Part shown: positions 7,085-54,558 of the stretch, in pieces
Numbering within the stretch: position 1 is the stretch's first letter
Layout of the letters: every line of letters begins with the position of its first letter
Virus record (IMG/VR): IMGVR_UViG_3300027749_002876
Location: 186,001-250,000 of that record
Length of the DNA stretch: 64,000 bases
Direction: 5' to 3' (one strand)
Translations under genes and position numbers: made by a program
Notes under the pieces: model-generated
Database searches by the model: none
Seen by the model: only the letters and a program-made list of their open reading frames with translations
Told to the model about the DNA's origin: nothing

Positions 7085-7711
7085 TTATATTGTTCCCATT
7101 GGAGGAGGTGCATTGGCGTCCATTGGCATATTGCCTGTCATACCGGGCATCTGTTGTTGGTCTTGTCCACCATCTTCACTACCATCACTATCTTCTTCGT
7201 CTAAATCGTCCTCATATGAATTATCTAACTCATTCAAATCAATATTTTGACCAGCTAAATCAATACTACCTTCACGGATATCATCCATGATTTCTTTAGG
7301 CATTTCTATGTAGACTAGCCATACTTGTTTTTTCTGCATTTTTGGATAACGTGTCCCGGGCACATAATCATCAGGATTTTCTACTTCAACCGGAACTTCA
7401 ATCTTAGTTTTTTTCCATTGTATTTTGCAACCTAATTTAACTAAACGTTTAGCCCCACTTGGGTCAGGCATTAGTTTATATGGCCACATGAACATACATC
7501 CCACTGAGTAGCGTTTAACTACCGGGCCTTGAACTAACTCACCTAGCTGCCAGTTTCTGAAGGCATATATATCAGCTTCATCTAAAACACGTTCAAAATC
7601 TAATAATACGGACATAGAACCATTGCTGGTATATATCCCTTTTATGGTGCTAATAATGCTGACATAATCAACATCATCAAAAAAATCGTCGGCGACAGGT
7701 AAAGTACTCAT
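7085..7711 (-). CDS. hypothetical late protein with acidic tail
   Basis: 208-aa ORF; GATAAATA 5 nt upstream of ATG. Confidence 0.7.
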   Translation of the reverse strand: MSTLPVADDFFDDVDYVSIISTIKGIYTSNGSMSVLLDFERVLDEADIYAFRNWQLGELVQGPVVKRYSVGCMFMWPYKLMPDPSGAKRLVKLGCKIQWKKTKIEVPVEVENPDDYVPGTRYPKMQKKQVWLVYIEMPKEIMDDIREGSIDLAGQNIDLNELDNSYEDDLDEEDSDGSEDGGQDQQQMPGMTGNMPMDANAPPPMGTI

Positions 7712-7716
7712 ATATG

Positions 7717-7724
7717 TATTTATC
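7717..7724 (-). promoter_or_regulatory. late promoter GATAAATA, 5 nt before ATG; second copy at 7772-7779
   Basis: T4 TATAAATA-like motif that recurs before many late genes in this window. Confidence 0.75.
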
Positions 7725-7879
7725 TTATTACAATATTATAGATAGATTTCAAAAGTTTGGGAATAGCCTAATATTTATCATTGGAACTTGTGTTAAAAGT
7801 ATGCTACTATGTACGTAAACATTGACCTTAAATAATATTGAGTGTTATGAGAACTCACGCTCTACAAAGGAGAATCAAC

Positions 7880-8685: not shown

Positions 8686-8944
8686 GTTTGGCAGTAATTC
8701 CTGCTTCTTTTTCTAACTGTTCAATAAGATTGGTATATATTTTCTTATAGTATTCATTCATCTTATCAAAATCAGTATCAACTATCTTACCTTCAATTAC
8801 GCACTTTTCTACTTTTTTCTTTGCGTAATCAATAATAACATTGCAGGTTTGTAAGTCTGCTTTTTTAATATTTTTACTTACAGCAACAGACTCATCAATC
8901 TGCCCGCCCGGTCTTCTCATAAATGTAATGAGTAAATATCTCAT
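8672..8944 (-). CDS. hypothetical protein
   Basis: 90 aa; ATGA overlap with the clamp-loader gene. Confidence 0.7.
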   Translation of the reverse strand: MRYLLITFMRRPGGQIDESVAVSKNIKKADLQTCNVIIDYAKKKVEKCVIEGKIVDTDFDKMNEYYKKIYTNLIEQLEKEAGITAKQNGA

Positions 8945-9864
8945 GCCGTCAATTCCGCCAGTGTTGCTGCCAGTGAAATTTCAGGAATCCCTACTAATGG
9001 CAGATTTGCTAAACCATTGCGAATTATAATGATACTTGCGTCTTTCTTCTCTGATGAGTTACCCCACAAGTCTAAGTTATCATACATCCATTTGTAAGTA
9101 TCTTCGACACGTGTAGGGTACATAGCAATGTATTGCATTAGTTGTTGTCTTGCTTCCATAATCTTACCTGCTTTAAACAACTGCGTTGCTTCTAACAATA
9201 GCTCATGTTCACTACTACCCTGTGCTTGTGGCTTCATCAACTTGTTACCACTACTATTAACCTGTAATTGATTTAAACATTTACGCAAATCTGGGTATGT
9301 TGCACGAACATAACTATCTAAATCATCTAAATCAAATTCAACATTCTCAGTAACCAATACTGTAGCGGCTCTTGCGGTGAACTCAGTTTGATCGGTCTTT
9401 GCAATGTGAAATTCATGGCATCGTGATTTTAATGCAGGGATAATTTTATGTTGATAGTTGCATGTGAGAATATATCTTACAGTATCAGCATATGCTTCCA
9501 TATCGTTACGCAATGCCGCTTGTGAAGCTTGTGTTAAGTAATCAGCTTCGTCTAGTAGAACAACCTTGAATTTACCAAACGGCATCGTTTGAACAAAACC
9601 ATTAATCTTATCACGCATATTATCAACACCGTTTTCTCTACTAGCATTGATTTCCAATACGTCATAATCTTCTACTCCAAGTTCGTGTATCAACACTTTT
9701 GCAAGAGTTGTCTTACCAGTACCCGGATCACCACTCAATAGTAAATGCGGTATAGTACCTTCACTTACCCAACCTTCAACTTGTTTCTTTTGTCGTTCAT
9801 TAACAAACACATAATCTTGTACTGTGTTCGGACGATACTTCTCAACCCAAAGTTTGTTCTTCAT
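8941..9864 (-). CDS. gp44: clamp loader AAA+ subunit (gp44/RFC-like)
   Basis: LWVEKYRP, GDPGTGKTT, INAS, DEAD, ALKSRC. Confidence 0.95.
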   Translation of the reverse strand: MKNKLWVEKYRPNTVQDYVFVNERQKKQVEGWVSEGTIPHLLLSGDPGTGKTTLAKVLIHELGVEDYDVLEINASRENGVDNMRDKINGFVQTMPFGKFKVVLLDEADYLTQASQAALRNDMEAYADTVRYILTCNYQHKIIPALKSRCHEFHIAKTDQTEFTARAATVLVTENVEFDLDDLDSYVRATYPDLRKCLNQLQVNSSGNKLMKPQAQGSSEHELLLEATQLFKAGKIMEARQQLMQYIAMYPTRVEDTYKWMYDNLDLWGNSSEKKDASIIIIRNGLANLPLVGIPEISLAATLAELTA

Positions 9865-11443: not shown

Positions 11444-12040
11444 TTATTTTACCGTATCTAATGTAAAAATAATTTCAGTTGCTTCGGGTTTACATAAGTG
11501 TTTCCAACCCAAATCTAATTCAGCCCATTCATTGTCTTTATGTAATTTGACAATCTTATCTTTTTTGTTTGTTTTTTTGTTATTTGAAATGTTTGAACCA
11601 CTATCATTCCACCAACTAGTTTTGTCATTATATGGTTCAAAATCATCTTCAATGTCTACTAAATATTCAACATCATCACTTAATTGAGATTTAAATGACA
11701 TATGTGTAATGTTAAATTTACCTTCAGTAATAGCATTCATTTTTAGTAATAATGGAATTGCTAATGCTTGGTCATATGGTTCAACTGGAAGCACACATAC
11801 CTTCATTCCCAAATTAGTAAAAGTATCTATAACTTTTTTCTCAGTAGATTGAATAAAAACTGAATTGGTAATACATTCATCAACAAAGTATTTCATTCTT
11901 TCAAGTGCAATAGTTTGTTCATATGGTTCTTCAGTTAGTATATCAACAAACATTGTAAAGGAATACATTCCAATTTGATACTCATCATGTAACCATATTC
12001 CAGCGATGAAATTAAATTCTCGTTTAATTCTAGCGGTCAT
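11444..12040 (-). CDS. hypothetical protein
   Basis: 198 aa; ATGA coupling. Confidence 0.7.
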   Translation of the reverse strand: MTARIKREFNFIAGIWLHDEYQIGMYSFTMFVDILTEEPYEQTIALERMKYFVDECITNSVFIQSTEKKVIDTFTNLGMKVCVLPVEPYDQALAIPLLLKMNAITEGKFNITHMSFKSQLSDDVEYLVDIEDDFEPYNDKTSWWNDSGSNISNNKKTNKKDKIVKLHKDNEWAELDLGWKHLCKPEATEIIFTLDTVK

Positions 12041-12276
12041 TTTTTACCCTCTTTTTCTACACTGATAGATGATTGAATGTTTTGTTTTTTCATTATAGCA
12101 TCCATTTTGATGCCATATTCTTTTTTATAACTATCTAAGACCATGCAAAGCTGATGAATCATGGGTCCATTTTGCATTGAGTATGCAAAGTTAAGTTTTT
12201 TAGTTAAATCCGAAATAGACGTTTGAAGGTCTTCAAGCGACTTATCAGACAGTGATGTAATGAACGGATGTTCCAT
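12037..12276 (-). CDS. hypothetical small helical protein
   Basis: GATAAATA (12282-12289) 5 nt before ATG. Confidence 0.7.
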   Translation of the reverse strand: MEHPFITSLSDKSLEDLQTSISDLTKKLNFAYSMQNGPMIHQLCMVLDSYKKEYGIKMDAIMKKQNIQSSISVEKEGKK

Positions 12277-12311
12277 TCAAATATTTATCTAGTAATAACG
12301 TGTTGAAATTT

Positions 12312-22482: not shown

Positions 22483-22968
22483 TCATTTATTATCTGTTTT
22501 TGATGCCGACAACATCTTCAGCAATGCATTACGGTCTAAACTTTTTCCTTCACCTAATGGGGTAGCATTTATTTCTTCTTCTTTACCCGCAGTTTTTTGG
22601 TCTAGTTGTGCTTTTTTAAGCTGTAAATCAAGCATTTTAAGCTTCTTGTTGATTTTGGCTGTCTTTGACGTAATTGCGTGACCTAAAAAACTACTGGCAC
22701 TGTTAAAGATTTCACTAGCAAAACGACTATCAACTTGCATACCTAAGTCCATTAAATCTTTATAGCTATCGGTTGCTAATCTAGCAAGCTCGTCCATTTC
22801 AGTATCGCTTGCTTCTAGTCCTCTAACTTGAGGCAATGCGGCTTCAATTTTATCTAATGCTTCTGCTGTATCAGTTGTGATTTCTTCCATAGTTTCAGGC
22901 AAGGAAATAGTAATACCCCTATCATTATTTTCTGGAAGCTCAAATAAATCTTCTAATTTTTTGGTCAT
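22483..22968 (-). CDS. probable terminase small subunit (gp16-like)
   Basis: helical protein; SRFASEIF and C-terminal LDRNALLKML loosely parallel gp16 patterns; next to gp4; late promoter 4 nt upstream. Confidence 0.5.
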   Translation of the reverse strand: MTKKLEDLFELPENNDRGITISLPETMEEITTDTAEALDKIEAALPQVRGLEASDTEMDELARLATDSYKDLMDLGMQVDSRFASEIFNSASSFLGHAITSKTAKINKKLKMLDLQLKKAQLDQKTAGKEEEINATPLGEGKSLDRNALLKMLSASKTDNK

Positions 22969-22979
22969 ACAGTATTTAT

Positions 22980-23417
22980 TTACCTTCCCTTACCCTGATG
23001 AAAAAGGTCATCTTCTGTTATAACTCTAAAGGTGTAACCATGTTGTTTACAGAAAGCCATAGCTGACTGCCATTTAGCGTGATTGATTGCTACAACCATA
23101 CGGTCTTTGGCACTTGCAACTTTGCTTTCAATTAAGCTTTGTTTCTTGGGTTTAATTTCTACTACTTCAGCTATTTGTTTGCCGTACTTGTTTTGATAAA
23201 CTACAAAGAAGTCAGGTATATATATGGTTGGCTTACCTGTAAATGGATGACGATACGGTACACTAAATGATTCACTAGCCCAATATAATACACTTTTATT
23301 ACTATCACAGAATGTCATAAATGTAAGTTCCCAACCACTGCGATATCTAGGTGCATGTTTACCTATATATTTTTTTGGGTTCTTGGGTGTGAATAAACCC
23401 TGTGCATACTTAGCCAT
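22980..23417 (-). CDS. gp4: head completion nuclease (T4 gp4-like, TnsA-type)
   Basis: PKNPKKYIG...YRSGWE...WASE...YIPDF...EIKPKKQ...NHAKW...FRVITE. Confidence 0.9.
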   Translation of the reverse strand: MAKYAQGLFTPKNPKKYIGKHAPRYRSGWELTFMTFCDSNKSVLYWASESFSVPYRHPFTGKPTIYIPDFFVVYQNKYGKQIAEVVEIKPKKQSLIESKVASAKDRMVVAINHAKWQSAMAFCKQHGYTFRVITEDDLFHQGKGR

Positions 23418-25032: not shown

Positions 25033-25668
25033 TTAACCTTGACCAGAACCAATACCGGTTACAGTTGAACCACCCAAGATTCTGCCAATGTTTGTACCAA
25101 TGCCACTTGTTAACGGAGACTGGACTGCGTTATCGTAACGAATTGTCAATGCAATAGTTGCGATTTCGTTTGATCCATAATTCAATGAACCATAGTTAGC
25201 TGTTTTTAGATAACAGCCATAGCATTCCCAAGTTTCTAATACTTGAGGAACAGCAGTACCATTACCACCGTCTAATACTTCAATGTTTGTTTGAAACTTA
25301 TAATCTTGACCAGTTGCGGCTGAAGCTTGTTCAACCATGTCTAATTGTTTCTGTACTTGTTGACCAACTAATTTAGAAACACTACCTTGAGCATCATCTC
25401 TAACATTAATTGTCAATTCATTCCAACTATGTTTACCTGCCAAATACAATGTTGAGTTGTAAATAGGTATAGTAATTTCTTCAAAACTGATTTGTGGTCT
25501 GTTAAGGTCTATTACTTGTTTAGTCAACTCAATAGTTGCTCCAGTACCGAAACTCAAAAAGTTAACTCTGAAACGGTATTGTAATTTGGGCATCAACAAG
25601 CCCTGGTTTCCACCAGCGTTGTCTGACGCTACTGTCATGTTGAACAATGATTGTGAGGCTGTTGCCAT
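25033..25668 (-). CDS. gp19: tail tube protein
   Basis: PKLQYRFRV...YLAGKHSW...WECYGC...LTIRYDNA; downstream of the sheath; late promoter at 25689-25696. Confidence 0.88.
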   Translation of the reverse strand: MATASQSLFNMTVASDNAGGNQGLLMPKLQYRFRVNFLSFGTGATIELTKQVIDLNRPQISFEEITIPIYNSTLYLAGKHSWNELTINVRDDAQGSVSKLVGQQVQKQLDMVEQASAATGQDYKFQTNIEVLDGGNGTAVPQVLETWECYGCYLKTANYGSLNYGSNEIATIALTIRYDNAVQSPLTSGIGTNIGRILGGSTVTGIGSGQG

Positions 25669-25704
25669 TTTTTAATCTCCTGTATACTTATTTATCTTTA
25701 ACAT

Positions 25705-25728: not shown

Positions 25729-28700
25729 TTATGCTGTTGCTTGTATCTCACCTGTGTTTAGAACACGTACCGGGATGTAAATGAATTCAGCCGCTTTTAC
25801 TGGCTCAATTGCAACGTCAACCCATAATTCGTTTCTATCAATTCTTGCTGGTGTGTTGTTTTGGTCATCACATTGTACAAGATAATCATAGATACCACGT
25901 TTAGCTACCAAATCAACCATCAATGTTTGAACAACACCCGCAATTTGATTACGTGTTAATGCATCATTTGGCTCAAATACAAACGGTCTTGCTGCCAATG
26001 TTAATTGACGGCGTATGTAATTGACTAATCGTGCAACGTTTGTTCTATCTAATGCACTTTGACTATTATAGCTATTCTTGTTACCATAATTCAATAATCC
26101 TATACCAGTAAAGAATACTAGAGGATTGATGAAGTTAATATATAACACATCACGAATACCCAAACGTGTCTTGATCGCTACAAACTCACCGGTAGTACGA
26201 TCCAAGTAACCAATGTTCAATGCATTGTCAATGTTACCTCTACGTGTACCAGCTGCCGCTAACCAAGGATAAGCAATGTTATCATTACGTAAGAATGTTC
26301 GTAACATCATATGACTTGCTGGAACAACAACTTCATTACCATTCAAATCATTTGTAATTCCACTTGGATAGAATAGACCTAAATATGTATTACGTGTAAC
26401 TAATCCTGCTTCACCTGTAGATACAGCACCTGCATCGTTGTTAGCCCAGGCTTGAATTTCAGTCGCACCATCAACTAACCCTAATGGTGTATCACCGATA
26501 ATATAACCTGTCTCACCACGATCAGCATTCAATACAACCATGTTAGGTTGTAGTTCTGGATAGTTAGGTGTAGCTAATAAATTGAAGTAATTATCTTCAT
26601 CTCGTATATCCGTGTTCGTATCAATTGCTGAACGCAATGATTGAACAACCATAGCACGTTGTGCTTGACGACCCATATATGGACTACCGTCTGCTTTATT
26701 TCCACTAACTGTTACCCATGCATCTGTTTGTGTAGGCAATGTTTCGTCTGGGAAACTTGCGTTATTAAAATAGTTTACACGGAATTGTTTAACGTTATAA
26801 CCTGAACGTCTTGTGTTAAACAACAGCATACCTTGTGGATATAGTGCTGGATTAGGAGCATCTAAATCTAAGTAGTTGCTTGTTAACAAACTTTTGATTG
26901 TTGGTATAGGATCATCAACTGGACTTGTTGTACCATTTGTTGCCCAACGTGCATCTAAGAATGTAACACCTGTTGAACTTACTTGGTCTGTATTATTAAT
27001 CAAAATCCATTGAGCTACACCACCAACCAATTCCCAACGACTGATTACTGGATATACTTCTAAATTACTTGTATCAATCCATAAATCACCGTAACTTAGT
27101 GCATCGCCTGTACTTTGTGTAGTTGGCTTTGATGCAGATATAATCGGACCATTGATATCAGTTGTGTTTGATCCAGATGATGCTGGTGCACCAGTTGTAT
27201 CATAACTAGTATTTCTATAACCAATCCAAGCACCACCTTTTTGTACCATTATATCAACTTGGTCAACTACACTGTAGAACCAATTTGTATTATTTGCCGG
27301 TGCAACTGCAGGGGCACTATCATTACTGGTATAATAGAAATCAATCCAATTACTTAGTTGGGTTCTAAATCCAATAGCAGGTAAACCACTCTCATAAGTA
27401 ACTGCGGTAACTGGGCCAGTTGCTCCTCCACCTGAAATAGTAGCAACAATCACAGTTAAATCATTAACACTAGCTACTCCACCTAAACTTGAACCAGAAA
27501 CAGTAATTGTATCACCTATAGCATATCCGCTACCTCCGCTAGTTACACCATCACCATTTAAGAAATATGTACCAGGAACAGCTTTAACAGTTAATGTAGC
27601 GCCAGATCCAGATCCAGATGTAGAATTTTGCGGGGCTGTTGAGAATATAGCAAAACTATTAGGACCATACTTAACATTAGGCTGTGCATTTATTACAAAA
27701 CCGGCCTCAACTATAGCTCCATTTGATACACCAATACCGTCGAATGAACTATTTACAGTGTCATCTAATATAATTTCACCACCCTCAGTATGTTCTAATT
27801 GAATAGATCCTTCAGTTGTTACTGATGCCATTGTATAAGGAATTCCGGCTGCTGCCCAAGCTGTTACAAAATCAGTAGCATCACTATTGTCAGGAATAGT
27901 CACATTATAAGCAACACTTAAAGTAGTACTTCCGGGCACACTCACATAAACATTCATATAATATGGCCCAGCATTAAACATTGGTTCTGTATTATCACCT
28001 ACCACAATAGTAGCACCAATTGCGGCACGCTCCCAAATGTACAACGGAGAACTTGGCCATGATCCATCAAATCCATATTGTGCATATATACTGCCTGCGG
28101 GTATTGCTTTACCTCCGGTTGCATCAAGCACGTTAGTAACAGTCCAATCGCTAGTTGCTAATGTTACTGTTTTGTTAATCCAACTTGCTGTTGCTGAATT
28201 ATATCTAGACATAGAAGGTTGTAAACCATTACCAGCGGAACCTACTTTAATCCATACTGCTCCAGTTGGTTGTGGTTGAGATTGACTTGAAGTCCATAAT
28301 GGCATTTGAGCACTAGTCCCGTATTTAATAATAGGTTGATTAAATCTACTAGCTACAATACCCAAGTCAGACAATACACCATCAGTTGATGAAAGGGTAA
28401 TATAAGGTGAACTTGATGGTAAGAATTGATTTGAAAATATGCATAATTTACCATCACGTACTTCGGATGATAAAGAAGTCCAACCTAAATCATTAATTGC
28501 AGTAGCAACACCTTCAACTGTGGCATCTGCCGGAACAGTAATTGTTGCTGTATATAATCCACTCATGCTAATATTAAAAGTGTCACCGACACTTAATGAA
28601 GGGTTAGAATTTGAACCTTGAACACACGGAGTATCTAATCTCCAACCAGTTGTTCCTAACGAAACCCATTCATTTAATGTTGTTTTATAGAAATACGTTT

Positions 28701-29304
28701 TATTATTAAGGTCGTTTGGTGCACCATCGACAGCCATTGCATTTACTGCATAATCACCAATATTTCCTATACTATTTAATGGTATTCCATAAGCTAAATC
28801 CATAGAATCAGTAATAACTATAGGTTGCTGTAATACAAATCTACCAGTAGTTGCATTAAATTCATATATTCCCCATGTGCTTGTTGTAGTATCTAACCAA
28901 TATGTTCCATTGTCTGGATTACCAACTGGACGACCTGTTTGACCAACTAGACTAGCTAGGTCAATCTCACAACGTAGTACGTAGCAACGATTTGTAACTC
29001 CTAGTAATGAATAAGCGGCTAACAAACCATATTCGTTAAGTTCATATCCTTGAATAGGTGTACCATTTGTCGTTGTATAGAAGAACGGTGTACCATATAA
29101 GTTTACTAAATCACGTTGACTTGTTACTTGATATAATTTATTTGCATTAGCGGCTGTAGTTGCTACTGCTACCCCTGTTCCAGTTGCATTTGCTTTATTT
29201 TGAGCAGTTGCTAATAGAACTATTGGGACTGAATTGGTTGGGGCTGGTAAATATTGACTTTCATCAGTAATCGTTACCTGTACGCCAGGAGAAGTTAATG
29301 CCAT
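25729..29304 (-). CDS. gp18: contractile tail sheath protein with large insertions
   Basis: MALTSPGV.V...DES; C-terminal PWLAAAG.RRG, INP, ALDRTNVARL, FVFEPND, IEPVKAAEFI; late promoter at 29358-29365. Confidence 0.95.
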   Translation of the reverse strand: MALTSPGVQVTITDESQYLPAPTNSVPIVLLATAQNKANATGTGVAVATTAANANKLYQVTSQRDLVNLYGTPFFYTTTNGTPIQGYELNEYGLLAAYSLLGVTNRCYVLRCEIDLASLVGQTGRPVGNPDNGTYWLDTTTSTWGIYEFNATTGRFVLQQPIVITDSMDLAYGIPLNSIGNIGDYAVNAMAVDGAPNDLNNKTYFYKTTLNEWVSLGTTGWRLDTPCVQGSNSNPSLSVGDTFNISMSGLYTATITVPADATVEGVATAINDLGWTSLSSEVRDGKLCIFSNQFLPSSSPYITLSSTDGVLSDLGIVASRFNQPIIKYGTSAQMPLWTSSQSQPQPTGAVWIKVGSAGNGLQPSMSRYNSATASWINKTVTLATSDWTVTNVLDATGGKAIPAGSIYAQYGFDGSWPSSPLYIWERAAIGATIVVGDNTEPMFNAGPYYMNVYVSVPGSTTLSVAYNVTIPDNSDATDFVTAWAAAGIPYTMASVTTEGSIQLEHTEGGEIILDDTVNSSFDGIGVSNGAIVEAGFVINAQPNVKYGPNSFAIFSTAPQNSTSGSGSGATLTVKAVPGTYFLNGDGVTSGGSGYAIGDTITVSGSSLGGVASVNDLTVIVATISGGGATGPVTAVTYESGLPAIGFRTQLSNWIDFYYTSNDSAPAVAPANNTNWFYSVVDQVDIMVQKGGAWIGYRNTSYDTTGAPASSGSNTTDINGPIISASKPTTQSTGDALSYGDLWIDTSNLEVYPVISRWELVGGVAQWILINNTDQVSSTGVTFLDARWATNGTTSPVDDPIPTIKSLLTSNYLDLDAPNPALYPQGMLLFNTRRSGYNVKQFRVNYFNNASFPDETLPTQTDAWVTVSGNKADGSPYMGRQAQRAMVVQSLRSAIDTNTDIRDEDNYFNLLATPNYPELQPNMVVLNADRGETGYIIGDTPLGLVDGATEIQAWANNDAGAVSTGEAGLVTRNTYLGLFYPSGITNDLNGNEVVVPASHMMLRTFLRNDNIAYPWLAAAGTRRGNIDNALNIGYLDRTTGEFVAIKTRLGIRDVLYINFINPLVFFTGIGLLNYGNKNSYNSQSALDRTNVARLVNYIRRQLTLAARPFVFEPNDALTRNQIAGVVQTLMVDLVAKRGIYDYLVQCDDQNNTPARIDRNELWVDVAIEPVKAAEFIYIPVRVLNTGEIQATA

Positions 29305-29432
29305 TTTATTTTTCCTTTATGTAAAATTATGAGGTTTACTACCTTTTTGCATACTATTATTTATCTAATATCTTTAAAAAAACATAACTACTATGCTGTT
29401 TTGTGCCTTCGAAGGTTCCTGATAAATATATC

Positions 29433-29780
29433 ATGCTTAGACCTATATGCAAAACATGCGGAAAGAATCACTGTGCTGTGAATTATATCCGTGAGGGTAT
29501 TACACACTATCGCAGTGGATGTGATGAATGTGGACGTAAGAAAAAGAAGTTAAAGCCTAGAAAGGCTAACTGGACTAAGAGTGGTTATAAGAAAAAAGCC
29601 ACATGTGATTTGTGTGGCTTTAAGAGTTTGTTTCCTGCGCAAATGACAGTATATCACATTGACGGTAATTTAGAGAATATTGCTCTTACTAATTTACGAA
29701 CTGTTTGCTTATGCTGTATTGAGGTTGTTAAACGCAAGGAAGTAACTTGGCGTCGAGGTGATTTACAGGTTGACCACTGA
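29433..29780 (+). CDS. Cys-rich zinc-binding HNH-like protein (start revised to MLRPICK)
   Basis: three CxxC pairs plus YHIDGN...NLRTVCLCC; GATAAATA at 29421-29428. Confidence 0.7.
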   Translation: MLRPICKTCGKNHCAVNYIREGITHYRSGCDECGRKKKKLKPRKANWTKSGYKKKATCDLCGFKSLFPAQMTVYHIDGNLENIALTNLRTVCLCCIEVVKRKEVTWRRGDLQVDH

Positions 29781-30410: not shown

Positions 30411-30439
30411 AGTTTATCACATACTAATAGTAAAGTCAA
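30411..30439 (-). promoter_or_regulatory. sigma70-type promoter TTGACT-N17-TAAACT, 6 nt before ATG
   Basis: motif and spacing; no SD. Confidence 0.65.
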
Positions 30440-31272
30440 TTAGTATTTGCCCTATTATAATCCTCAAACAATTCTTCTATTGTTTTGTGACACTTAGCAC
30501 CCTTACTTGAATTTTCTATTTTTGGAATTAATCTTAGATTAGTCCAATGACCAATAACTTCTACAGAGATATTATTTTTGAATCCCTCGCTGATACTATA
30601 AATGTGGTCTAAATGTAATTGATTACTTCTTTCTAATTTATTTGGATTGATATCATAAAAATGTTCATACCAGTTTTTATTAGTAATCAATTTGACAGCG
30701 TTGTAATATTCTTCTACTAGAGTTCTATCTTTGGGATTGAGTGATTGCCATTCTTTGTTTCTATCTGAAAGTTTTTGTTTGATAGTAGGATGTTTGGATG
30801 GATTATCAACTCCGTACTTTTCCATCCAAGTTTTTCTTGCCGCCGCAAGGCTGGCTTTGTAGTCTCTATTGCGTTCATTCCATGGTTTATGATTACCTTC
30901 AATAAATCCAATTGAGAATTTTTTATTTGCTTGCATAGACTTATCGGGATCTTTTTGCCTCCAGTGATTCCCGGTAGTTGCTTTACTAACTATTTCTCCT
31001 ATTGCAGTATTTTTTATAGCTACAGATGAAAATTTGCGATAGGCTTTTTCATTCCATCTTAGAGGTTTTGCAGTAATCGGGCACACCTCAATAGAATATC
31101 GTTCGTTAAGTATATGCCATACTCGTTGTTTTGGTTTAGCATTAGGTGGTAGGAACGATGTAGCCTCTAAAATGTCAGACCATAATTCAGGGTGGGTTTT
31201 ACTCAAATATCTGGTTACAGATTTATTACAACTTGTATCTTCAGCAATAATGGTTGCAAGTATGTTTCTCAT
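30436..31272 (-). mobile_element. free-standing HNH homing endonuclease gene
   Basis: C-terminal HLDHIYS...IGHWTNLRLIPKIENSSKG; EKYGVDNPSK repeat-type motif; lies between gp13 and dNMP kinase. Confidence 0.8.
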
Positions 31273-31310
31273 ACTTGTATTTATGCCTTATCCTTATACT
31301 CATGTAAGAA

Positions 31311-32158: not shown

Positions 32159-33112
32159 TTAGGCGTAACCATACCCTGCGGCGCCTAGATAACTTCTAGC
32201 AGTACCAACTCCTGTGGTATTTGTGGCAACAACACCTGCATTACTTACTAAATTGGTTATTGATGTTGCTGATCCGGTATCTCCATATCCAAATATAGCT
32301 TTATCAGCACCATAAATTGCGGCTGCTAGACCGGTTCTGGCAGTACCAACACCTGTAGTGTCACTGGCAATAGTACCGGTATTACTTACTAGATTAGTTA
32401 TTGCAGTAACTCCAATAGTACCACCATATCCATATCCAAATATAGCTGTATCAGTACCGTAGCCGGTTGCCGCCATATAACCTCTAGCAGTACCAACACA
32501 AGTAGTATTACTAGCAACTACTCCCGTATTGCTTACTAAGTTGATCGTTGACACTTGTGTACCACTGGAATTTTCACCAAATGCAAACATAGCTTTATCT
32601 GTTCCATATCCTACCGCCGCAATTTGATTCCTAGCAGTACCGGAACTCCCTACATCAGTAGCAACTACGCCCGTATTTGACACTAAGTTAGTCATCGATG
32701 CTCGGCTAGAATTATTAATCCATCCAAATCCAAATATAGCTTTATCTGTTCCATAACTTGCGGCTGCTAATCCATTTCTAGCAGTGCCTACACCAGTAGT
32801 ATCTGTAGCAACTACACCAGTATTTGATACTAGATTAGTTACTGCTGTTACAGCCACTGCTGGATAAACTGATCCAACATCACCGTATCCAAATATACCT
32901 TTGTCAGTACCATAAGTAGCGGCGGCTAAACTATTTCTAGCAGTGCCTACACCAGTAGTATCTGTAGCAACTACACCAGTATTTGATACTAGATTGGTCA
33001 TTGATACTAAAGTAGTTGAATAACCATATCCAAATATTGCCTTGCTTGAGGGGGGAGGTTGCTTTGTTACACTTACCCCGGCTCCAAATGAAATTCCTGC
33101 TCCAATATCCAT
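32159..33112 (-). CDS. six-repeat Kelch-like beta-propeller protein, paralog 2
   Basis: 6 x KAIFGYG-[variable]-TNLVSNTGVVATDTTGVGTAR-xx-LAAAGYGTD; own late promoter at 33132-33139 and AAGGA SD. Confidence 0.75.
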   Translation of the reverse strand: MDIGAGISFGAGVSVTKQPPPSSKAIFGYGYSTTLVSMTNLVSNTGVVATDTTGVGTARNSLAAATYGTDKGIFGYGDVGSVYPAVAVTAVTNLVSNTGVVATDTTGVGTARNGLAAASYGTDKAIFGFGWINNSSRASMTNLVSNTGVVATDVGSSGTARNQIAAVGYGTDKAMFAFGENSSGTQVSTINLVSNTGVVASNTTCVGTARGYMAATGYGTDTAIFGYGYGGTIGVTAITNLVSNTGTIASDTTGVGTARTGLAAAIYGADKAIFGYGDTGSATSITNLVSNAGVVATNTTGVGTARSYLGAAGYGYA

Positions 33113-33163: not shown

Positions 33164-34108
33164 TTACACGGAACCATAACTTGCGGATGCGAGCCAACCT
33201 CTGGTAGTACCTACACCTGTAGTATCGGTAGCTACAACTCCTGTGTTTGATACTAGGTTGGTCATTGATAACTTAGTATTGGTAACATTTTGACCATATC
33301 CAAATATAGCCTTATCGGTACCATAACCTGCGGCTGCTAATGAATATCTAGCAGTGCCAACACCGGTAGTATCACTAGCAATAGTACCTGTATTACTTAC
33401 TAGATTAGTTATTGCTGTTACATCCCCGGATACTGTACCAAAACCAAATCCAAAAATAGCTTTATCAGTGCCGTAGCCTGCGGCTGCTAATGCATACCTA
33501 CTAGTACCGACACCTATCACATCATTACCAACTACACCTGTATTTGAAACTAGATTGGTGATTGAGTTTGGACCACCACCTGTTCCATATGAAAAAATAG
33601 CTTTATCAGTACCGTATCCTGCGGCTGCTAACGCATATCTAGCAGTGCCAACACCTGTTACATCATTACCAACTACACCTGTATTTGAAACTAGGTTAGT
33701 TAGTGAATAAGTTGTTGCTCCGATTCCATATCCAAATATAGCTTTATCAGTTCCATAGCCTGCGGCTGCTAACGAATATCTAGCAGTGCCAACACCCGTA
33801 GTATCTGTAGCAACTACACCTGCATTTGATACTAGATTGGTCACCGATACTGCCGCAAATGACCCATCTCGCCCAAATCCAAATATAGCTTTATCAGTAC
33901 CATAACCTGCGGCTGCAAGTTGTTGTCTAGCAGTGCCAACACCCGTAGTATCTGTAGCAACTACACCTGTGTTTGATACTAAGTTAGTTATCGAAATTTG
34001 TGTACCGGAATTATTAGTACCATATCCAAAAATTGCTTTATATGAGGGTGGGGGTTGTGGAGTTACACTTACTCCACCGCCAAATGAAATTCCTGCTCCA
34101 ATATCCAT
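33164..34108 (-). CDS. six-repeat Kelch-like beta-propeller protein, paralog 1
   Basis: same six-repeat architecture; own late promoter at 34128-34135. Confidence 0.75.
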   Translation of the reverse strand: MDIGAGISFGGGVSVTPQPPPSYKAIFGYGTNNSGTQISITNLVSNTGVVATDTTGVGTARQQLAAAGYGTDKAIFGFGRDGSFAAVSVTNLVSNAGVVATDTTGVGTARYSLAAAGYGTDKAIFGYGIGATTYSLTNLVSNTGVVGNDVTGVGTARYALAAAGYGTDKAIFSYGTGGGPNSITNLVSNTGVVGNDVIGVGTSRYALAAAGYGTDKAIFGFGFGTVSGDVTAITNLVSNTGTIASDTTGVGTARYSLAAAGYGTDKAIFGYGQNVTNTKLSMTNLVSNTGVVATDTTGVGTTRGWLASASYGSV

Positions 34109-35805: not shown

Positions 35806-35845
35806 CCTTAGGATTCAAGCGTAGGACATTGCGATAAATACTATT

Positions 35846-37540
35846 ATGCCAAAACTGTCACTATACCGCCCAAATAAACAAAATGATTATCGTTTCTTCG
35901 ATAGGACAATATCCGAAGAATTACGTGTTGGCGGCACGGATTTATACATTCACAAGTATTTAGGTCCAACTAATCAAGGACCTAGTATTGATTATACTCA
36001 ACCAGAATATGATAGTTTAAATCCTACTAATATTCAGGATCTATTATTCCTAGAGAATAGAGATAGAACATACGATCCAAACATTTATAGATTACGTGGT
36101 CACTATAATGTACAGAATTTAGACTTTGATTTAAGTCAATTTGGTTTATTTTTAAATAACGATATTATCTTTATCAATGTACATTATAATGATATGATTG
36201 ATATTGTTGGTCGCAAGTTAATGGTGGGTGATGTATTAGAATTACCTCACTTATTAGATTATAATCCATTAAAAGAAACTATCCCAGTAGCATTAAAAAG
36301 ATTTTATAGTATTACTGATGCTAACTTTTCCAGTGAAGGATTTAGTCAAACATGGTATCCACATATGTGGCGTATTAAATGTGAACCATTAGTTGACAGT
36401 GAAGAATTTAGTCAAATATTAGCTGAACCAATTAACCAAGATAACTATTTAGGATTATGGGATAAAGATAAAACATATCCACCGGGTTATGTTATTACAT
36501 TTGGTGATAAGAATTATGTCAGTAAAATAGAAGTACCTATTGGCATTATGCCACCAAATCCAACATATTGGGAGTTAGATACGGCATCAAATCTTAAAGA
36601 TATTCTCGCTACTTATAATAAGAATATTGCAATTAATAATGCGGCATTGGAAGAGGCTAAACGTCTTGTACCTAAATCAGGATATGATAATAATAATTTA
36701 TATATTGTGCCTACATATGGTGTATTTGAAACTGATACACAATTATCAGGTAAATATAATCAACCTGCACCACCTGTTAATGTTATAATATCAAACTTTG
36801 GTCCGCCTACTGCTACTGTACAAATGATGCGTTCTTCACAATATAGAAACGCTAGCCCAGTATTACGTATACCTGCTAATTCAGTAAAAACAATTTGGGA
36901 TATGACACATGAAGGCGGTGCAATAGAACCTAGTGCAACGTTGTCATTACGATCAATGACCATTAAACCTACATTAACTGACACTGGTTCAGGTGCAGTA
37001 TCAGGTGATATTGTATTGACACTTGATAGTATTGGCGTCATTACAGGACCATATGGTACAGCAGATAATACATATGCAACGGCTGACCAGAATCCAGAAT
37101 TACCAGGATTTACCGATGAGATAACACCAGACATGGACTTTAGAGCAGATTGTGATCCACGATTCCAATTCATTGCACGTAGTAGTCCAAGAAGTTTTGG
37201 ATATACAACAGGTTACTTAGATGGTACAGGTGAAGCTCCAAATGGATTCCCAACAGGTGCTGGCATTAGTTTCCCGCAAAATCCTCAAGTAGGAGATTAT
37301 TTCTTACGTATAGATTATTTGCCACAATTACTATATCGTTGGGATGGTCAATTGTGGATAAGAATTTCACAAAATGTAAGAACAGATACCGGTATGACTA
37401 CAGGAGATTTGTCACAACAATCTAGCTTCATAAATAATAGCAATGTAACAGTATTAACTGATGGCACAACTACTACACAGAAACAGGCATTGAGTACAAT
37501 ACTTACAATTGCACCAGACACGATACCACCACAACCTTAA
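35846..37540 (+). CDS. neck/head-closure protein (gp14-like) with extensions
   Basis: upstream of gp15; LSQFGLFL..D and GDVLELP pattern; WDKDKTYPPGYVI...PPNPTYW insert; GATAAATA 5 nt before ATG. Confidence 0.65.
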   Translation: MPKLSLYRPNKQNDYRFFDRTISEELRVGGTDLYIHKYLGPTNQGPSIDYTQPEYDSLNPTNIQDLLFLENRDRTYDPNIYRLRGHYNVQNLDFDLSQFGLFLNNDIIFINVHYNDMIDIVGRKLMVGDVLELPHLLDYNPLKETIPVALKRFYSITDANFSSEGFSQTWYPHMWRIKCEPLVDSEEFSQILAEPINQDNYLGLWDKDKTYPPGYVITFGDKNYVSKIEVPIGIMPPNPTYWELDTASNLKDILATYNKNIAINNAALEEAKRLVPKSGYDNNNLYIVPTYGVFETDTQLSGKYNQPAPPVNVIISNFGPPTATVQMMRSSQYRNASPVLRIPANSVKTIWDMTHEGGAIEPSATLSLRSMTIKPTLTDTGSGAVSGDIVLTLDSIGVITGPYGTADNTYATADQNPELPGFTDEITPDMDFRADCDPRFQFIARSSPRSFGYTTGYLDGTGEAPNGFPTGAGISFPQNPQVGDYFLRIDYLPQLLYRWDGQLWIRISQNVRTDTGMTTGDLSQQSSFINNSNVTVLTDGTTTTQKQALSTILTIAPDTIPPQP

Positions 37541-39742: not shown

Positions 39743-39832
39743 GATTGATCCTTTTATATATTTATCATTAAGGTGATTATTCTATAAAAAGTAATTATTC
39801 TATCGTCATCTAATACTGTGATAAATCATAGT

Positions 39833-40249
39833 ATGAGTAATATTTCTGCAGGTGTCTTTTTTTATTCCGGTACTACTAACCGTTTCTTATATCTATTAAG
39901 AAATGATAATAGAAACCCGGGTAACTGGGGAATACCTGGTGGTAAGATAGAAAGTGATGAAACATTACTTGAAGGACTACAACGTGAATGTATGGAAGAA
40001 ATAAATTACTTTCCAAATCATGCTAAACTTGTGCCCATTCAAAAGTTTGTAAATAATACATTTACCTATCATACATTTTTTTGTAAAGTGTCAGAAGAAT
40101 TTACACCTATATTAAATGAAGAACATTGCGGTTATGCATGGGTAGGTGAGAAACAATATCCTAAACCATTACATCCGGGATTATTCAATACTGTTAATTT
40201 TGATATTGTTCAATCTAAGTTAAATGCACTTACAAAAAAAGAGACCTAA
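39833..40249 (+). CDS. NUDIX hydrolase (start revised to MSNISAG)
   Basis: WGIPGGKIESDETLLEGLQRECMEE Nudix box; GATAAATC 5 nt before ATG. Confidence 0.9.
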   Translation: MSNISAGVFFYSGTTNRFLYLLRNDNRNPGNWGIPGGKIESDETLLEGLQRECMEEINYFPNHAKLVPIQKFVNNTFTYHTFFCKVSEEFTPILNEEHCGYAWVGEKQYPKPLHPGLFNTVNFDIVQSKLNALTKKET

Positions 40250-46849: not shown

Positions 46850-47332
46850 TTAGGATTTTAAGCCAAATCTTTTCTGTTGCCAAGCATATGAATTTGCTAT
46901 ATATTTGTTCAATTCATCACTCATAGATTTTTTTTGAAATTTATCTTCATTCAATTTAGCAAGATAGATTAGTTTATCCTCTGTTTTTTTAGCTTTTTTA
47001 AACAATTTAGAATGAATAGAAATGTGTACTTCTACACTACTTAAATACATATCCAAATCAATTACTCGATTTGCTAGTTGATACTTTCCTATTTTGTCCA
47101 ATACACACCAACATACTGCGTTTTTCATACTAAAAAAAGAATTAACATCATCTCCGTTATTTAATGATACTGTTATGTTATTTACATCTTTCTTTTTAAT
47201 ATGATACTTGTTAAACAAACTGTATGTACCATCGGTATCTTGGAAGATGACAACATCTTGTAATTTGGCAAATTCTGATGTTGATATCATGTTGTCCAAT
47301 TTTCTATCAATCTTTGCAATATCAACTTTCAT
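46850..47332 (-). CDS. hypothetical protein
   Basis: 160-aa ORF in operon. Confidence 0.65.
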   Translation of the reverse strand: MKVDIAKIDRKLDNMISTSEFAKLQDVVIFQDTDGTYSLFNKYHIKKKDVNNITVSLNNGDDVNSFFSMKNAVCWCVLDKIGKYQLANRVIDLDMYLSSVEVHISIHSKLFKKAKKTEDKLIYLAKLNEDKFQKKSMSDELNKYIANSYAWQQKRFGLKS

Positions 47333-47783
47333 TGTTTACCACCTTAAAGTAAATGTTTCGTAATTCGTCAGATGTATCTAAAAATCCAGGAAGTTTAGAC
47401 CATGCTGTGTCAGTTTTAATCATAGGAACACTATCACAATCTGAATACAATGATCCTAATTCTGTTATCCCATCATCAAATACACTAGGATGCTGTATCT
47501 CAAAATCAAATGTCCAACATATATATTCTTCATTATCATGTTGTTCAAACAAGAATCCAAAATTATCAAACTCATCAAATTTAATGTTTATTTGTTTAGG
47601 ATAATTTAGTATCTCGGGTTGACTACGTAATGATATAGCCTGTAATATAGTATCAAAATTACATTGTGTGTTACGTTTATGTAACCAAATGTTTTCATCC
47701 TCATCAAGTGCAGGTTTATTCCTGTTAACAGTACCAGTCTGTGTAATATCAAATAACGTATAACAACTTAATGTGAAACTCAT
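47322..47783 (-). CDS. hypothetical late protein (start revised to MSFTLS)
   Basis: CTAAATA 5 nt before ATG. Confidence 0.7.
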   Translation of the reverse strand: MSFTLSCYTLFDITQTGTVNRNKPALDEDENIWLHKRNTQCNFDTILQAISLRSQPEILNYPKQINIKFDEFDNFGFLFEQHDNEEYICWTFDFEIQHPSVFDDGITELGSLYSDCDSVPMIKTDTAWSKLPGFLDTSDELRNIYFKVVNNES

Positions 47784-47799
47784 ACATGTATTTAGAGGC

Positions 47800-47829
47800 A
47801 AAAAAAATCCGAGAATAAATCTCGGATTT
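47800..47829 (-). terminator. intrinsic terminator
   Basis: AAATCCGAGA / TCTCGGATTT with T-run on the minus strand. Confidence 0.85.
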
Positions 47830-47849
47830 CTTTGAAGTTAAACTTCTAA

Positions 47850-53723: not shown

Positions 53724-54491
53724 TTATCTTGACAAAATATTGGTTACTGCCCCGTTATTACTTTCAAATTGCATTCTAATATACGGGTGATAACCTTGAA
53801 CCACGTATCCTATTGTATCAGTTTCAGCAGTATAAGTATCGGTTAATATGGGATACCAATCACCGTCTACAATAGTAGAACCTTCAATAACAATATTGCC
53901 ATAGAAGTCACTATATTGTGCTTGTAGTGTTAATATAGGACTATCATTTGTATCTATAACACTGGTATAATATGTTAGGTCACTATCACTATTACCTTCA
54001 GGGTTAGTATTTGGGAATACTTGTCCAGTAGGAATACTGATTGGCATTGAAGGAATAAAGCTAGGTAATACACTGTTAACAATATTCATATCGCCGCGGG
54101 CACCTGCATTGCTATCAACAAATACAGGATAGTCAAACTCTCCTACAGGAATTTCTAATGAGTAATAACATTTTTGTGCGTCAATACCTGCAAGGTCTGC
54201 TGGATTTAAAAATAATGCGGCAATACCGGTTGCAGGTAATTGTAGTGTTAATGCTTTTTGTAATAGGACCACGTTACCTTCATAATTGATAATTCTACAG
54301 GTTATTGATTTACCAGTAATATCTACGGGTTTTTGTTCTTGGTTTAAGAACTGAAACTGAATCTGGTTGTCTACACCCTTATTAAGAGTTAGAGGTTTGG
54401 CATACTGAGGCATATAGCTCCTTGGGGAAAATCCTGTTAAAAGTATAACGATTTGTCTTTGTGTATAGACGAAAACTTGAGTTGAGTACAT
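53724..54491 (-). CDS. virion structural protein (start revised to MYSTQV)
   Basis: GATAAATA 5 nt before ATG; beta-rich; KGVDN.IQFQFLNQEQKPVD. Confidence 0.6.
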   Translation of the reverse strand: MYSTQVFVYTQRQIVILLTGFSPRSYMPQYAKPLTLNKGVDNQIQFQFLNQEQKPVDITGKSITCRIINYEGNVVLLQKALTLQLPATGIAALFLNPADLAGIDAQKCYYSLEIPVGEFDYPVFVDSNAGARGDMNIVNSVLPSFIPSMPISIPTGQVFPNTNPEGNSDSDLTYYTSVIDTNDSPILTLQAQYSDFYGNIVIEGSTIVDGDWYPILTDTYTAETDTIGYVVQGYHPYIRMQFESNNGAVTNILSR

Positions 54492-54558
54492 AATGATATT
54501 TATCAAAATATATTGCCAGGCATTCCTGTGATAAATATTTCGGTCAATAATTATAATA

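What the first reader, a model, noticed from the sequence alone, without database searches (positions are those of the whole stretch)
7709..7724. Late promoter followed 4-5 nt later by ATG: a leaderless late-gene class
A T4-late-like box (mostly GATAAATA) occurs more than 20 times before late genes. In nine cases the ATG follows at an almost fixed distance with no room for an SD: 7711, 12276, 31272, 35846(+), 39833(+), 47783 and 54491 at 5 nt; 22968 and 29433(+) at 4 nt. Known: T4 gp55-dependent transcripts start a few nt after TATAAATA. Inference: these mRNAs start at the AUG. Sheath, tube and fibre genes keep SD leaders, suggesting two translational tiers for stoichiometry or for tolerance of damaged ribosomes.
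Basis: partly seen in the sequence, partly recalled or inferred. Interest (0 to 1): 0.7.

Follow-up and report, generated by a model that had tools for sequence, protein, structure and literature searches.

The report
Late promoters fused to start codons
In this roughly 350-kb freshwater jumbo phage, about one gene in twelve has a T4-type late promoter box 4-6 bases before its ATG, so its late mRNA most likely starts at the start codon with no ribosome-binding leader; related phages keep the arrangement gene by gene, but no transcript ends have been mapped.

Summary
All nine listed sites exist as described.

**Main numbers**
- In the one-genome equivalent (347.6 kb), 35 of 131 ATAAATA boxes have ATG 4-6 nt downstream. 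The genome's own background predicts 7.4, and shuffles give 14 ± 3.6.
- A second mode lies at 15-27 nt, with a Shine-Dalgarno (SD) sequence in between, and counts at 7-14 nt are at background level.
- Of the ATGs at 4-6 nt, 83% open ORFs of at least 50 aa. GTG and TTG are absent at 4-5 nt in the 524.6-kb contig.

**Supporting evidence**
- Both spacing classes share the same box flanks and have no -35 element.
- A gp55-like late sigma factor is encoded in the same genome.
- The T4 box spans -13 to -6, so a 5-nt spacer puts the A of ATG at +1.
- The arrangement is conserved per gene: large terminase 62 of 65 distinct orthologue contexts, the finding's own gene 25 of 31, and 20 of 25 orthologue pairs at 74% mean amino-acid identity.

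**Distribution**
T4 and nine other cultured T4-like or jumbo phages lack the peak. Pelagibacter phage HTVC008M has it.

**Gaps and precedent**
Transcript 5' ends could not be mapped because the metatranscriptome data were too sparse. The "two translational tiers" idea fits the gene lists (major capsid, sheath, tube and fibres are SD-led; terminase, baseplate hub, minor virion proteins, enzymes and homing endonucleases are leaderless-type) but is untested. The known precedent is Thermus phage phiYS40, so I rate this a new variant of a known kind.

The parts
7717..7724 (-). Late-promoter box GATAAATA, 5 nt before the ATG at 7711. This is the finding's own site.
   Evidence: Orthologues keep a box plus 4-5 nt plus ATG in 25 of 31 distinct contexts, down to about 50% amino-acid identity.
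7085..7711 (-). Leaderless-type gene, 208 aa, virion structural protein (phrog_12928). Its upstream neighbour is on the other strand.
7772..7779 (-). Second GATAAATA box, 60 nt upstream of the same ATG. It may be a tandem late promoter that gives a leadered transcript without an SD.
   Evidence: Not followed up.
12282..12289 (-). Box GATAAATA, 5 nt before the ATG at 12276 (gene 12037-12276, 79 aa).
   Evidence: The orthologue in G004 is also leaderless-type.
22973..22980 (-). Box AATAAATA, 4 nt before the ATG at 22968 (gene 22483-22968, 161 aa). The box overlaps the stop codon of the upstream gene.
   Evidence: The arrangement is kept in G004 and G006.
29421..29428 (+). Box GATAAATA, 4 nt before the ATG at 29433 (gene 29433-29780, 115 aa), at a strand switch.
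31278..31285 (-). Box CATAAATA, 5 nt before the ATG at 31272 (gene 30436-31272, 278 aa, homing-endonuclease-like).
35833..35840 (+). Box GATAAATA, 5 nt before the ATG at 35846, inside a 27-nt divergent intergenic region.
   Evidence: Of 31 distinct orthologue contexts, 19 keep 4-6 nt and 11 have the same box with a 17-21-nt leader.
35846..37540 (+). Leaderless-type gene, 564 aa, virion structural protein (phrog_11591). The N-terminus MPKLSLY is conserved from the ATG.
39820..39827 (+). Box variant GATAAATC, 5 nt before the ATG at 39833 (gene 39833-40249, Nudix hydrolase), at a strand switch.
47789..47796 (-). Box variant TCTAAATA, 5 nt before the ATG at 47783 (gene 47322-47783, 153 aa). A terminator hairpin and T-run lie directly upstream at about 47800-47831.
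   Evidence: The G004 orthologue keeps terminator, TTAAATA, 5 nt and ATG.
54497..54504 (-). Box GATAAATA, 5 nt before the ATG at 54491 (gene 53724-54491, 255 aa). It lies back to back with a + strand box at 54530-54537.
25689..25696 (-). SD-led class example: box GATAAATA, 20 nt before the tail tube gene (25033-25668), with CAGGAG in the leader.
29358..29365 (-). SD-led class example: box GATAAATA, 53 nt before the sheath gene (25729-29304). The leader is conserved and starts with ATGCA at box+5.

Best explanation
**What it is.** The 8-bp box has the consensus G/N-A/C-TAAATA and is usually followed by C. I read it as the late promoter of this phage, recognised by host RNA polymerase carrying the phage's gp55-like sigma factor.

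**How it works.** In T4 the box lies at -13 to -6, so transcription should begin at about the sixth base after the box.
- In about 33 genes per genome the ATG sits 4-6 nt after the box. The late mRNA then begins at, or within a base of, the AUG and has no Shine-Dalgarno leader. Translation must then start by the leaderless route, with the ribosome binding a 5'-terminal AUG.
- About 40-70 other genes carry the same box followed by a 10-22-nt leader that contains an SD sequence.

**Shown here:** the motif, the spacing statistics, the restriction to ATG, the shared flanks, the sigma gene, and conservation of the class gene by gene.

**Inferred:** the position of the transcription start (by analogy with T4) and the translation route.

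**Likely consequence (weaker inference).** This is a compact, self-contained and probably lower-yield expression signal. It is used for low-copy or catalytic late products: terminase, baseplate hub, minor virion proteins, enzymes and homing endonucleases. The bulk structural proteins (major capsid, sheath, tube, fibres) keep SD leaders.
For: - **Spacing.** ATAAATA-to-ATG counts in the 524.6-kb contig are 24, 31 and 8 at k = 4, 5 and 6, against a background of about 4. In the one-genome equivalent, 35 of 131 against 7.4 expected. Counts at k = 7-14 are at background, and a second mode lies at 15-27.
- **Real starts.** 83% of the ATGs at k = 4-6 open ORFs of at least 50 aa, against 18% of all ATGs.
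- **Start codon.** GTG occurs 0 times and TTG 0-1 times at k = 4-5.
- **Same element in both classes.** G at box position 1 in 45-63%, C just after the box in 45-54%, and no upstream conservation. In the SD-led class, A is enriched at positions 4-6 after the box.
- **Sigma factor.** A gp55-like protein of 301 aa matches phrog_12791 at E 1e-72 and phrog_234 at E 2e-20, and lies next to a gp47-like gene.
- **T4 geometry.** The T4 box spans -13 to -6 (PMC2988020).
- **Transcription-unit starts.** 13 of 33 leaderless-type genes have the upstream neighbour on the other strand, against 63 of 366 other genes (p = 0.004). Several others follow a terminator hairpin directly.
- **Conservation.** Large terminase 62 of 65 distinct orthologue contexts, with 9 box variants and 38 different spacers. 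The 208-aa gene 25 of 31, and the 564-aa gene 19 of 31.
- **Class inheritance.** 20 of 25 leaderless-type genes stay so in a genome at 74% mean amino-acid identity (odds ratio 464), and 5 of 12 at 50% identity.
- **N-termini.** When the N-terminus changes length, the box moves with the ATG.
- **Motif avoidance.** The motif is depleted overall, 131 against 209 in shuffles, as expected for a signal that is avoided elsewhere.
Against: - No 5' ends were mapped. The RNA runs hold only two exact single-read contigs inside gene 35846-37540.
- Box-to-start geometry is borrowed from T4. This sigma factor is 301 aa against 185 aa in T4, and only about 30% identical over the conserved core.
- No gp33 or gp45 homologue was detected.
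- Spacers of 4 and 6 nt are about as common as 5 nt in some genes, so some transcripts would start 1 nt off the A.
- The sheath leader has an invariant ATG at box+5 that is not a gene start. An ATG at +1 is therefore not always a protein start.
- Four of the nine window sites have alternative in-frame GTG or TTG codons upstream.
- The stoichiometry reading rests on a minority of annotated genes. Most leaderless-type genes have no known function.
Confidence: 0.75

Rival explanations
1. At these sites the box does not act as a promoter. It acts as an A/U-rich, SD-independent translation-initiation element (for example S1-dependent) inside polycistronic late mRNAs that start further upstream.
For: - The box is pure A/T and sits where an SD would sit.
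- 20 of 33 leaderless-type genes have a same-strand upstream neighbour, so read-through is possible.
- The finding's own gene has a second box 60 nt upstream that could supply a leadered transcript.
Against: - An enhancer would not need an exact 6-8-nt sequence at 4-6 nt.
- The same box with the same flanks lies 15-27 nt upstream of SD-led genes, where it cannot be a ribosome site.
- Leaderless-type starts are enriched at strand switches and directly after terminators, where no upstream transcript is available.
- The motif matches the T4 late promoter, and the sigma factor is present.
Confidence: 0.12
2. The box is the promoter, but transcription starts a few bases downstream of the ATG or well upstream of the T4-like position. 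The listed ATGs would then not be the translated starts, and real starts would lie further down.
For: - The start position is inferred, not measured.
- The sigma factor is diverged.
- Two orthologue alignments begin about 30 residues into the protein.
Against: - Most orthologue alignments begin at residue 1 on both sides.
- N-terminal residues are conserved from the ATG while the upstream DNA is not.
- One of the two late-starting alignments was a caller error. The G004 orthologue has terminator, box variant, 5 nt and ATG with a homologous N-terminus.
- 83% of these ATGs open long ORFs.
Confidence: 0.08
3. The pattern is a compositional or annotation artefact of an AT-rich genome.
For: - The genome is 36.5% G+C.
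- ATG and A/T-rich octamers are common.
- My gene calls are simple ORF calls.
Against: - The spacing histogram needs no gene calls and gives 35 against 7.4 from the genome's own background and 14 ± 3.6 from dinucleotide shuffles.
- T4, S-PM2, Syn9, KVP40, Aeh1, PA5oct, Phosso, GAP32, Atu_ph07 and 2.275.O show no peak.
- The arrangement is conserved gene by gene across diverged genomes.
Confidence: 0.02

Closest known systems
Phage T4 late promoters (gp55/gp33/gp45-dependent, TATAAATA at -13 to -6)
   Same: - An 8-bp A/T box with the invariant core TAAATA and no -35 element.
- It lies upstream of virion genes on either strand.
- A gp55-family sigma factor is encoded.
- Variants at box positions 1-2 (A, G or C at -13; C at -12) are of the kind reported for Aeh1 (PMC2988020).
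   Different: - The preferred first base is G, not T, and canonical TATAAATA is depleted.
- T4 has a single box-to-ATG mode at 21-29 nt and no peak at 4-6 nt.
- The sigma factor is 301 aa against 185 aa in T4.
- No gp33 or gp45 homologue was detected.
Thermus phage phiYS40 leaderless middle/late mRNAs
   Same: It is a large myovirus in which most middle and late transcripts lack a leader and are translated by the leaderless route (review PMC3594737; primary paper Sevostyanova et al. 2007, not held).
   Different: - The host phylum Deinococcus-Thermus uses -10-adjacent ORFs commonly (PMC12340547, title and abstract).
- The phiYS40 promoters are not gp55-type.
- phiYS40 infection is reported to raise IF2 and lower IF3. 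No IF2 or IF3 gene was found in this phage, and nothing is known about its host.
- Here only about 8% of genes are leaderless-type, and they coexist with an SD-led late class driven by the same promoter.
Classical leaderless mRNAs of bacteria and phages (lambda cI from PRM; actinobacterial and Deinococcus -10-adjacent genes)
   Same: A -10-type element lies 5-7 nt before an AUG, AUG is strictly required, and there is no SD (own knowledge; PMC12340547 title and abstract).
   Different: In those cases the promoters use sigma-70-type -10 hexamers. Here the element is a late, phage-sigma-specific box, so the leaderless state is tied to the late phase of infection.
Pelagibacter phage HTVC008M (cultured T4-like pelagimyophage)
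   Same: - It has the same arrangement: 13 of 64 [AC]TAAATA boxes have ATG exactly 5 nt downstream, against about 1.2 background.
- These ATGs are the annotated starts of genes that GenBank labels DNA end protector, head closure, baseplate tail tube cap, baseplate wedge subunit and putative tail tape measure, among others. My reading of their T4 equivalents is gp2, gp4, gp48, gp25 and gp29.
   Different: - It has a 147-kb genome, a marine SAR11 host and a spacer consensus GTAnn.
- It is not closely related to this phage.
- A comparative study reported that late-promoter prediction failed in pelagimyophages (PMC7029224).

Membership tests
T4-type (gp55-dependent) late promoter | 8-bp TATAAATA-like box with a conserved TAAATA core | tested here: met
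   GATAAATA is enriched 20 against 5.7. In the box profile, positions 3-8 are invariant by selection, position 1 is G in 45-63%, and position 2 is A or C. Orthologues carry the variants TATAAATA, ACTAAATA, GCTAAATA and CATAAATA.
T4-type (gp55-dependent) late promoter | No conserved -35 element | tested here: met
   Base frequencies from -20 to -9 relative to the box are flat in both classes. Upstream sequence is unconserved among orthologues.
T4-type (gp55-dependent) late promoter | Phage encodes a gp55-family sigma factor | tested here: met
   phrog_234 at E 4e-22 in the 171-kb contig that contains the window. The whole 301-aa protein matches phrog_12791 at E 1e-72. BLASTP against T4 gp55 gives E 2e-07.
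T4-type (gp55-dependent) late promoter | gp33 co-activator and gp45 sliding clamp | tested here: inconclusive
   phrog_223 found nothing, and the control search did not ring in any genome either. tblastn with T4 gp33 and gp45 found nothing, while a gp44-like clamp loader is present. Diverged homologues cannot be excluded.
T4-type (gp55-dependent) late promoter | Transcription starts about 6 nt after the box, late in infection | not testable with these tools
   RNA runs are too sparse, and there are no infection time courses for an uncultured phage.
Leaderless mRNA | Transcription start coincides with the A of the start codon | not testable with these tools
   This is inferred only from T4 geometry and from A enrichment at positions 4-6 after the box in the SD-led class.
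Leaderless mRNA | -10-type promoter element at a fixed short distance (about 5-7 nt) before the start codon, with no SD | tested here: met
   There is a sharp peak at 4-6 nt. The box occupies the SD position, and the whole interval is A/T-rich.
Leaderless mRNA | AUG start codon required | tested here: met
   ATG occurs 24 and 31 times at k = 4 and 5, GTG 0 and 0, TTG 0 and 1. GTG or TTG are the first start codon of 134 of 651 open frames overall.
Leaderless mRNA | The protein begins at that AUG | tested here: inconclusive
   Comparative support only. N-termini are conserved from the ATG, and the box follows the ATG when N-terminal length changes. There is no proteomics.

The most novel reading that the evidence does not exclude
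The late programme of this phage clade, and of pelagimyophages, may deliberately split late proteins between two initiation routes driven by one promoter type. The leaderless route would be favoured or protected late in infection by phage-modified ribosomes, since the phage encodes its own ribosomal protein bS21. A defined set of late genes would then stay translatable when SD-dependent initiation is altered by the phage itself or attacked by host defences.
Probability: 0.15. Interest if true: 0.8.

Novelty: new variant of a known kind. Interest (0 to 1): 0.6.

Why it matters
T4 late transcription is a textbook system, and in T4 it always yields short SD-containing leaders. Here the same promoter type is fused to the start codon in a conserved subset of genes, in a widespread clade of freshwater jumbo phages and in a cultured SAR11 phage.

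If confirmed, it would have four consequences:
- It gives a 16-nt, self-contained late expression signal (box, 5 nt, ATG).
- It improves start-codon and promoter annotation in uncultured T4-like and jumbo phages. One published attempt failed to predict late promoters in pelagimyophages.
- It shows that a proteobacterial-type phage can depend on leaderless translation for essential genes such as the large terminase.
- It makes testable whether phages tune late-protein stoichiometry, or evade translation-targeting defences, by choosing the initiation route.

Tried and rejected
- **RNA evidence.** DNA runs from freshwater metagenomes hold the phage. Five RNA runs hold 5-12% of the sampled words of gene 35846-37540. 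Laying four of them gave two exact 151-nt contigs inside the gene plus diverged relatives, with no 5'-end information.
- **Near-identity search.** A DNA search against cultured phages found nothing.
- **Literature.** I found no paper describing leaderless late genes in T4-like or jumbo phages. Most "leaderless" hits were citations of a gene-finder paper. The phiYS40 primary paper is not held.
- **gp45 and gp33.** Not detected by PHROG family or by tblastn.
- **IF2 and IF3.** No genes in the phage.
- **Chance or composition.** Rejected by shuffles, by the genome's own background and by ten other phage genomes.
- **Sigma-70 -10 reading of the box.** Considered and set aside from reading the sequence. 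TAAATA lacks the final T of TATAAT, and no -35 element is conserved.
- **Hairpin in the sheath leader.** Not supported. Only 3 weak pairs and no compensatory changes.
- **The 524.6-kb contig as "the genome".** Rejected for counting, because it holds about 1.5 genome equivalents. Counts are given for the 347.6-kb unit.

Full report
**Where the window lies**

- The window is bases 8903-72902 of a 91,322-bp viral contig.
- That contig is the first 91 kb of a 170,963-bp IMG/VR contig, at 99.996% identity.
- The 171-kb contig in turn equals 177,099-348,061 of a 524,565-bp contig.
- The 524.6-kb contig is not one genome.
  - Its first 173 kb is an inverted copy of its 400-520-kb region at 74-91% identity.
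  - A 4,089-bp stretch (172,924-177,012) recurs at its very end at 99.6%.
  - One genome equivalent is therefore about 347.6 kb.
- This size agrees with related contigs of 348.7, 352.0 and 364.4 kb. The last of these has direct terminal repeats.
- The DNA is found in freshwater and lake metagenomes.
- The nearest cultured phages are Sinorhizobium phage Phosso, the Pseudomonas PA5oct group and Agrobacterium phage Atu_ph07, at only 46-51% identity in sheath and large terminase.

**The observation**

- GATAAATA occurs 20 times in the window against 5.7 expected. Canonical TATAAATA is depleted, 2 against 12.9.
- A histogram of the distance from ATAAATA to any ATG needs no gene calls.
  - In the 91-kb contig, 16 of 40 boxes have ATG at 4-6 nt.
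  - In the 524.6-kb contig the counts at 4, 5 and 6 nt are 24, 31 and 8, against about 4 per position.
  - In the one-genome unit, 35 of 131 boxes have ATG at 4-6 nt. The genome's own background at 30-60 nt predicts 7.4 (p about 1e-14). Dinucleotide shuffles give 14.1 ± 3.6, maximum 23.
- The distribution is bimodal. Counts at 7-14 nt are at background, and a second broad mode lies at 15-27 nt with an SD-like sequence in between.
- Of the ATGs at 4-6 nt, 83% open frames of at least 50 codons, against 18% of all ATGs.
- GTG and TTG are essentially absent at 4-5 nt.
- With simple ORF calls, 33-34 of about 400 genes (8%) have this arrangement, and 41-69 have the box plus a leader.

**Why the box is a promoter and the same element in both classes**

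- Both classes share G at box position 1, A or C at position 2, C just after the box, an A/T-rich spacer and no upstream conservation.
- In the SD-led class, A is enriched 4-6 nt after the box. A T4-like start site would fall there.
- The motif is under-represented genome-wide, 131 against 209 in shuffles.
- In the window, the three + strand GATAAATA copies each precede a + strand gene.
- A gp55-family late sigma factor lies in the same genome next to a gp47-like gene. It is 301 aa and matches phrog_12791 at E 1e-72 and phrog_234 at E 2e-20.
- In T4 the box occupies -13 to -6 (PMC2988020). A 5-nt spacer therefore puts the A of ATG at +1.
- Leaderless-type genes are enriched at places where a transcript must start.
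  - 13 of 33 have the upstream neighbour on the other strand, against 63 of 366 other genes (p = 0.004).
  - 18 of 33 are either at a strand switch or directly behind a terminator-like hairpin, against 91 of 366 (p = 0.0007).
- Upstream of the large terminase and of gene 47322-47783, a terminator T-run ends a few bases before the box.

**Comparative evidence**

- *The finding's own gene (7085-7711, virion protein).* 25 of 31 distinct orthologue contexts keep a box, 4-5 nt and ATG, down to about 50% amino-acid identity. The N-terminal sequence itself changes across these orthologues.
- *Large terminase.* 62 of 65 distinct contexts keep the arrangement, with nine box variants and 38 different spacers. 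When the N-terminus is longer or shorter, the box moves with the ATG.
- *The 564-aa virion protein (35846).* 19 of 31 contexts are leaderless-type, and 11 have the same box with a 17-21-nt leader. Genes therefore switch class occasionally.
- *Whole-genome reciprocal best hits.* 20 of 25 leaderless-type genes stay so in a 348.7-kb relative at 74% mean identity (odds ratio 464), and 34 of 47 leader-class genes stay leader-class. In a 364-kb relative at 50% identity and 44.5% G+C, 5 of 12 stay leaderless-type and 2 more have 7 nt. One apparent loss was a gene-calling error.

**Distribution**

- T4 has a single TATAAATA-to-ATG mode at 21-29 nt and no peak at 4-6 nt.
- PA5oct, Phosso, GAP32, Atu_ph07, Vibrio phage 2.275.O, S-PM2, Syn9, KVP40 and Aeh1 show no excess of TAAATA-N4-6-ATG over the reversed-pattern control.
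- Pelagibacter phage HTVC008M does show it. 13 of 64 [AC]TAAATA boxes have ATG exactly 5 nt downstream.
  - These fall at annotated starts including the GenBank products DNA end protector, head closure, baseplate tail tube cap, baseplate wedge subunit and putative tail tape measure.
  - I read their T4 equivalents as gp2, gp4, gp48, gp25 and gp29.
- A comparative study of pelagimyophages reported that late-promoter prediction failed in them (PMC7029224).

**Which genes are in each class**

- *Leaderless-type:* large terminase, two virion structural proteins, baseplate hub/lysozyme-like protein (box AGTAAATA), Nudix hydrolase, radical-SAM protein, RusA-like resolvase, metallophosphoesterase, three homing-endonuclease-like genes, and many small proteins of unknown function.
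- *SD-led with the box:* sheath, tail tube, fibre-like proteins and a gp13-like adaptor. The major capsid protein also has a strong SD, behind a one-mismatch box.
- No IF2 or IF3 gene is present. One bS21 gene per genome equivalent is present.

**What is missing**

- No transcription start was measured. The RNA runs that hold any of gene 35846-37540 gave two exact single-read contigs inside the gene.
- The start position rests on T4 geometry, and the sigma factor here is diverged.
- gp33 and gp45 homologues were not found.
- The sheath leader carries an invariant ATGCA at box+5 that opens only a 3-54-codon frame of variable length in 41 orthologue contexts. An ATG at the predicted +1 is therefore not always a gene start.

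**Known precedent and verdict**

- Leaderless middle and late mRNAs are known from Thermus phage phiYS40 (PMC3594737).
- -10-adjacent ORFs are common in Deinococcus-Thermus (PMC12340547).
- I found no report of this for gp55-type late promoters.
- I rate the finding a real, conserved feature. It is most likely a leaderless late-gene class (confidence 0.75) and a new variant of a known kind.

Noticed in passing
G002 (IMGVR_UViG_3300027749_002876), whole contig; the window equals G002:186001-250000: The 524,565-bp contig that CheckV rates 100% complete holds about 1.5 genomes. Bases 1-172,923 are an inverted copy of about 400-520 kb at 74-91% identity, and 172,924-177,012 recurs at 520,477-524,565 at 99.6%. 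One genome is about 347.6 kb, so the contig is probably a cross-strain misassembly.
   Followed up: partly
G002:471943-472095 (-) and G002:63744-63896 (+): The phage encodes ribosomal protein bS21 (PF01165, E 1e-15 and 4e-16), one copy per genome equivalent. No IF2 or IF3 gene was found. This may bear on translation initiation, but I did not test it.
   Followed up: no
window 29305-29365 (-), sheath 5' leader: The roughly 48-nt leader between the late box and the sheath ATG is almost invariant in 41 distinct orthologue contexts whose proteins are only 68-91% identical. It includes an invariant TATGCA at box+5 that opens a mini-ORF of variable length (3-54 codons). The predicted hairpin is weak and shows no covariation.
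   Followed up: partly
L259-L266 (Pelagibacter phage HTVC008M, NC_020484): This cultured pelagimyophage shows the same arrangement of box, 5 nt and ATG at 13 genes, with the spacer consensus GTAnn. The ATGs match annotated starts of baseplate and neck genes.
   Followed up: partly
window 32159-33112 and 33164-34108 (-): These are tandem paralogues (317 and 314 aa) with identical promoter, leader and first codons: GATAAATAatataaaggaagatatattATGgatattggagcagga.
   Followed up: no
window 30436-31272 (-); G002:356776-357756 (+); G002:410493-411098 (+): Three homing-endonuclease-like genes (phrog_3339/5104, phrog_314, phrog_5104) use the leaderless-type signal. One sits directly after the major capsid gene. 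The 16-nt signal may travel with mobile genes.
   Followed up: no
L247:274-330 (PA5oct, NC_071039, large terminase): The annotated PA5oct terminase start lies inside a terminator-like hairpin (aaaagggtgttATGcaccctttt). The start homologous to this phage's terminase is the ATG 27 nt further on, right after the T-run and without an SD.
   Followed up: no
window 8941-9864 (-): A gp44-like clamp-loader subunit is present (tblastn with T4 gp44, E 2e-23), while no gp45 clamp or gp33 was detectable by T4 queries or phrog_223.
   Followed up: partly
G002:417170-418377 (+): Two leaderless-type boxes appear to follow tRNA 3' ends directly (…ggttcgaatcc…ccaccagTATAAATActgcATG), so small genes seem interleaved with a tRNA cluster. 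I recognised the tRNA ends by eye and did not run a tRNA search.
   Followed up: no
window 54497-54537: Back-to-back GATAAATA boxes on opposite strands, 25 nt apart, serve the divergent genes 53724-54491 (-, 5-nt spacer) and 54559-54939 (+, 21 nt, no clear SD).
   Followed up: no
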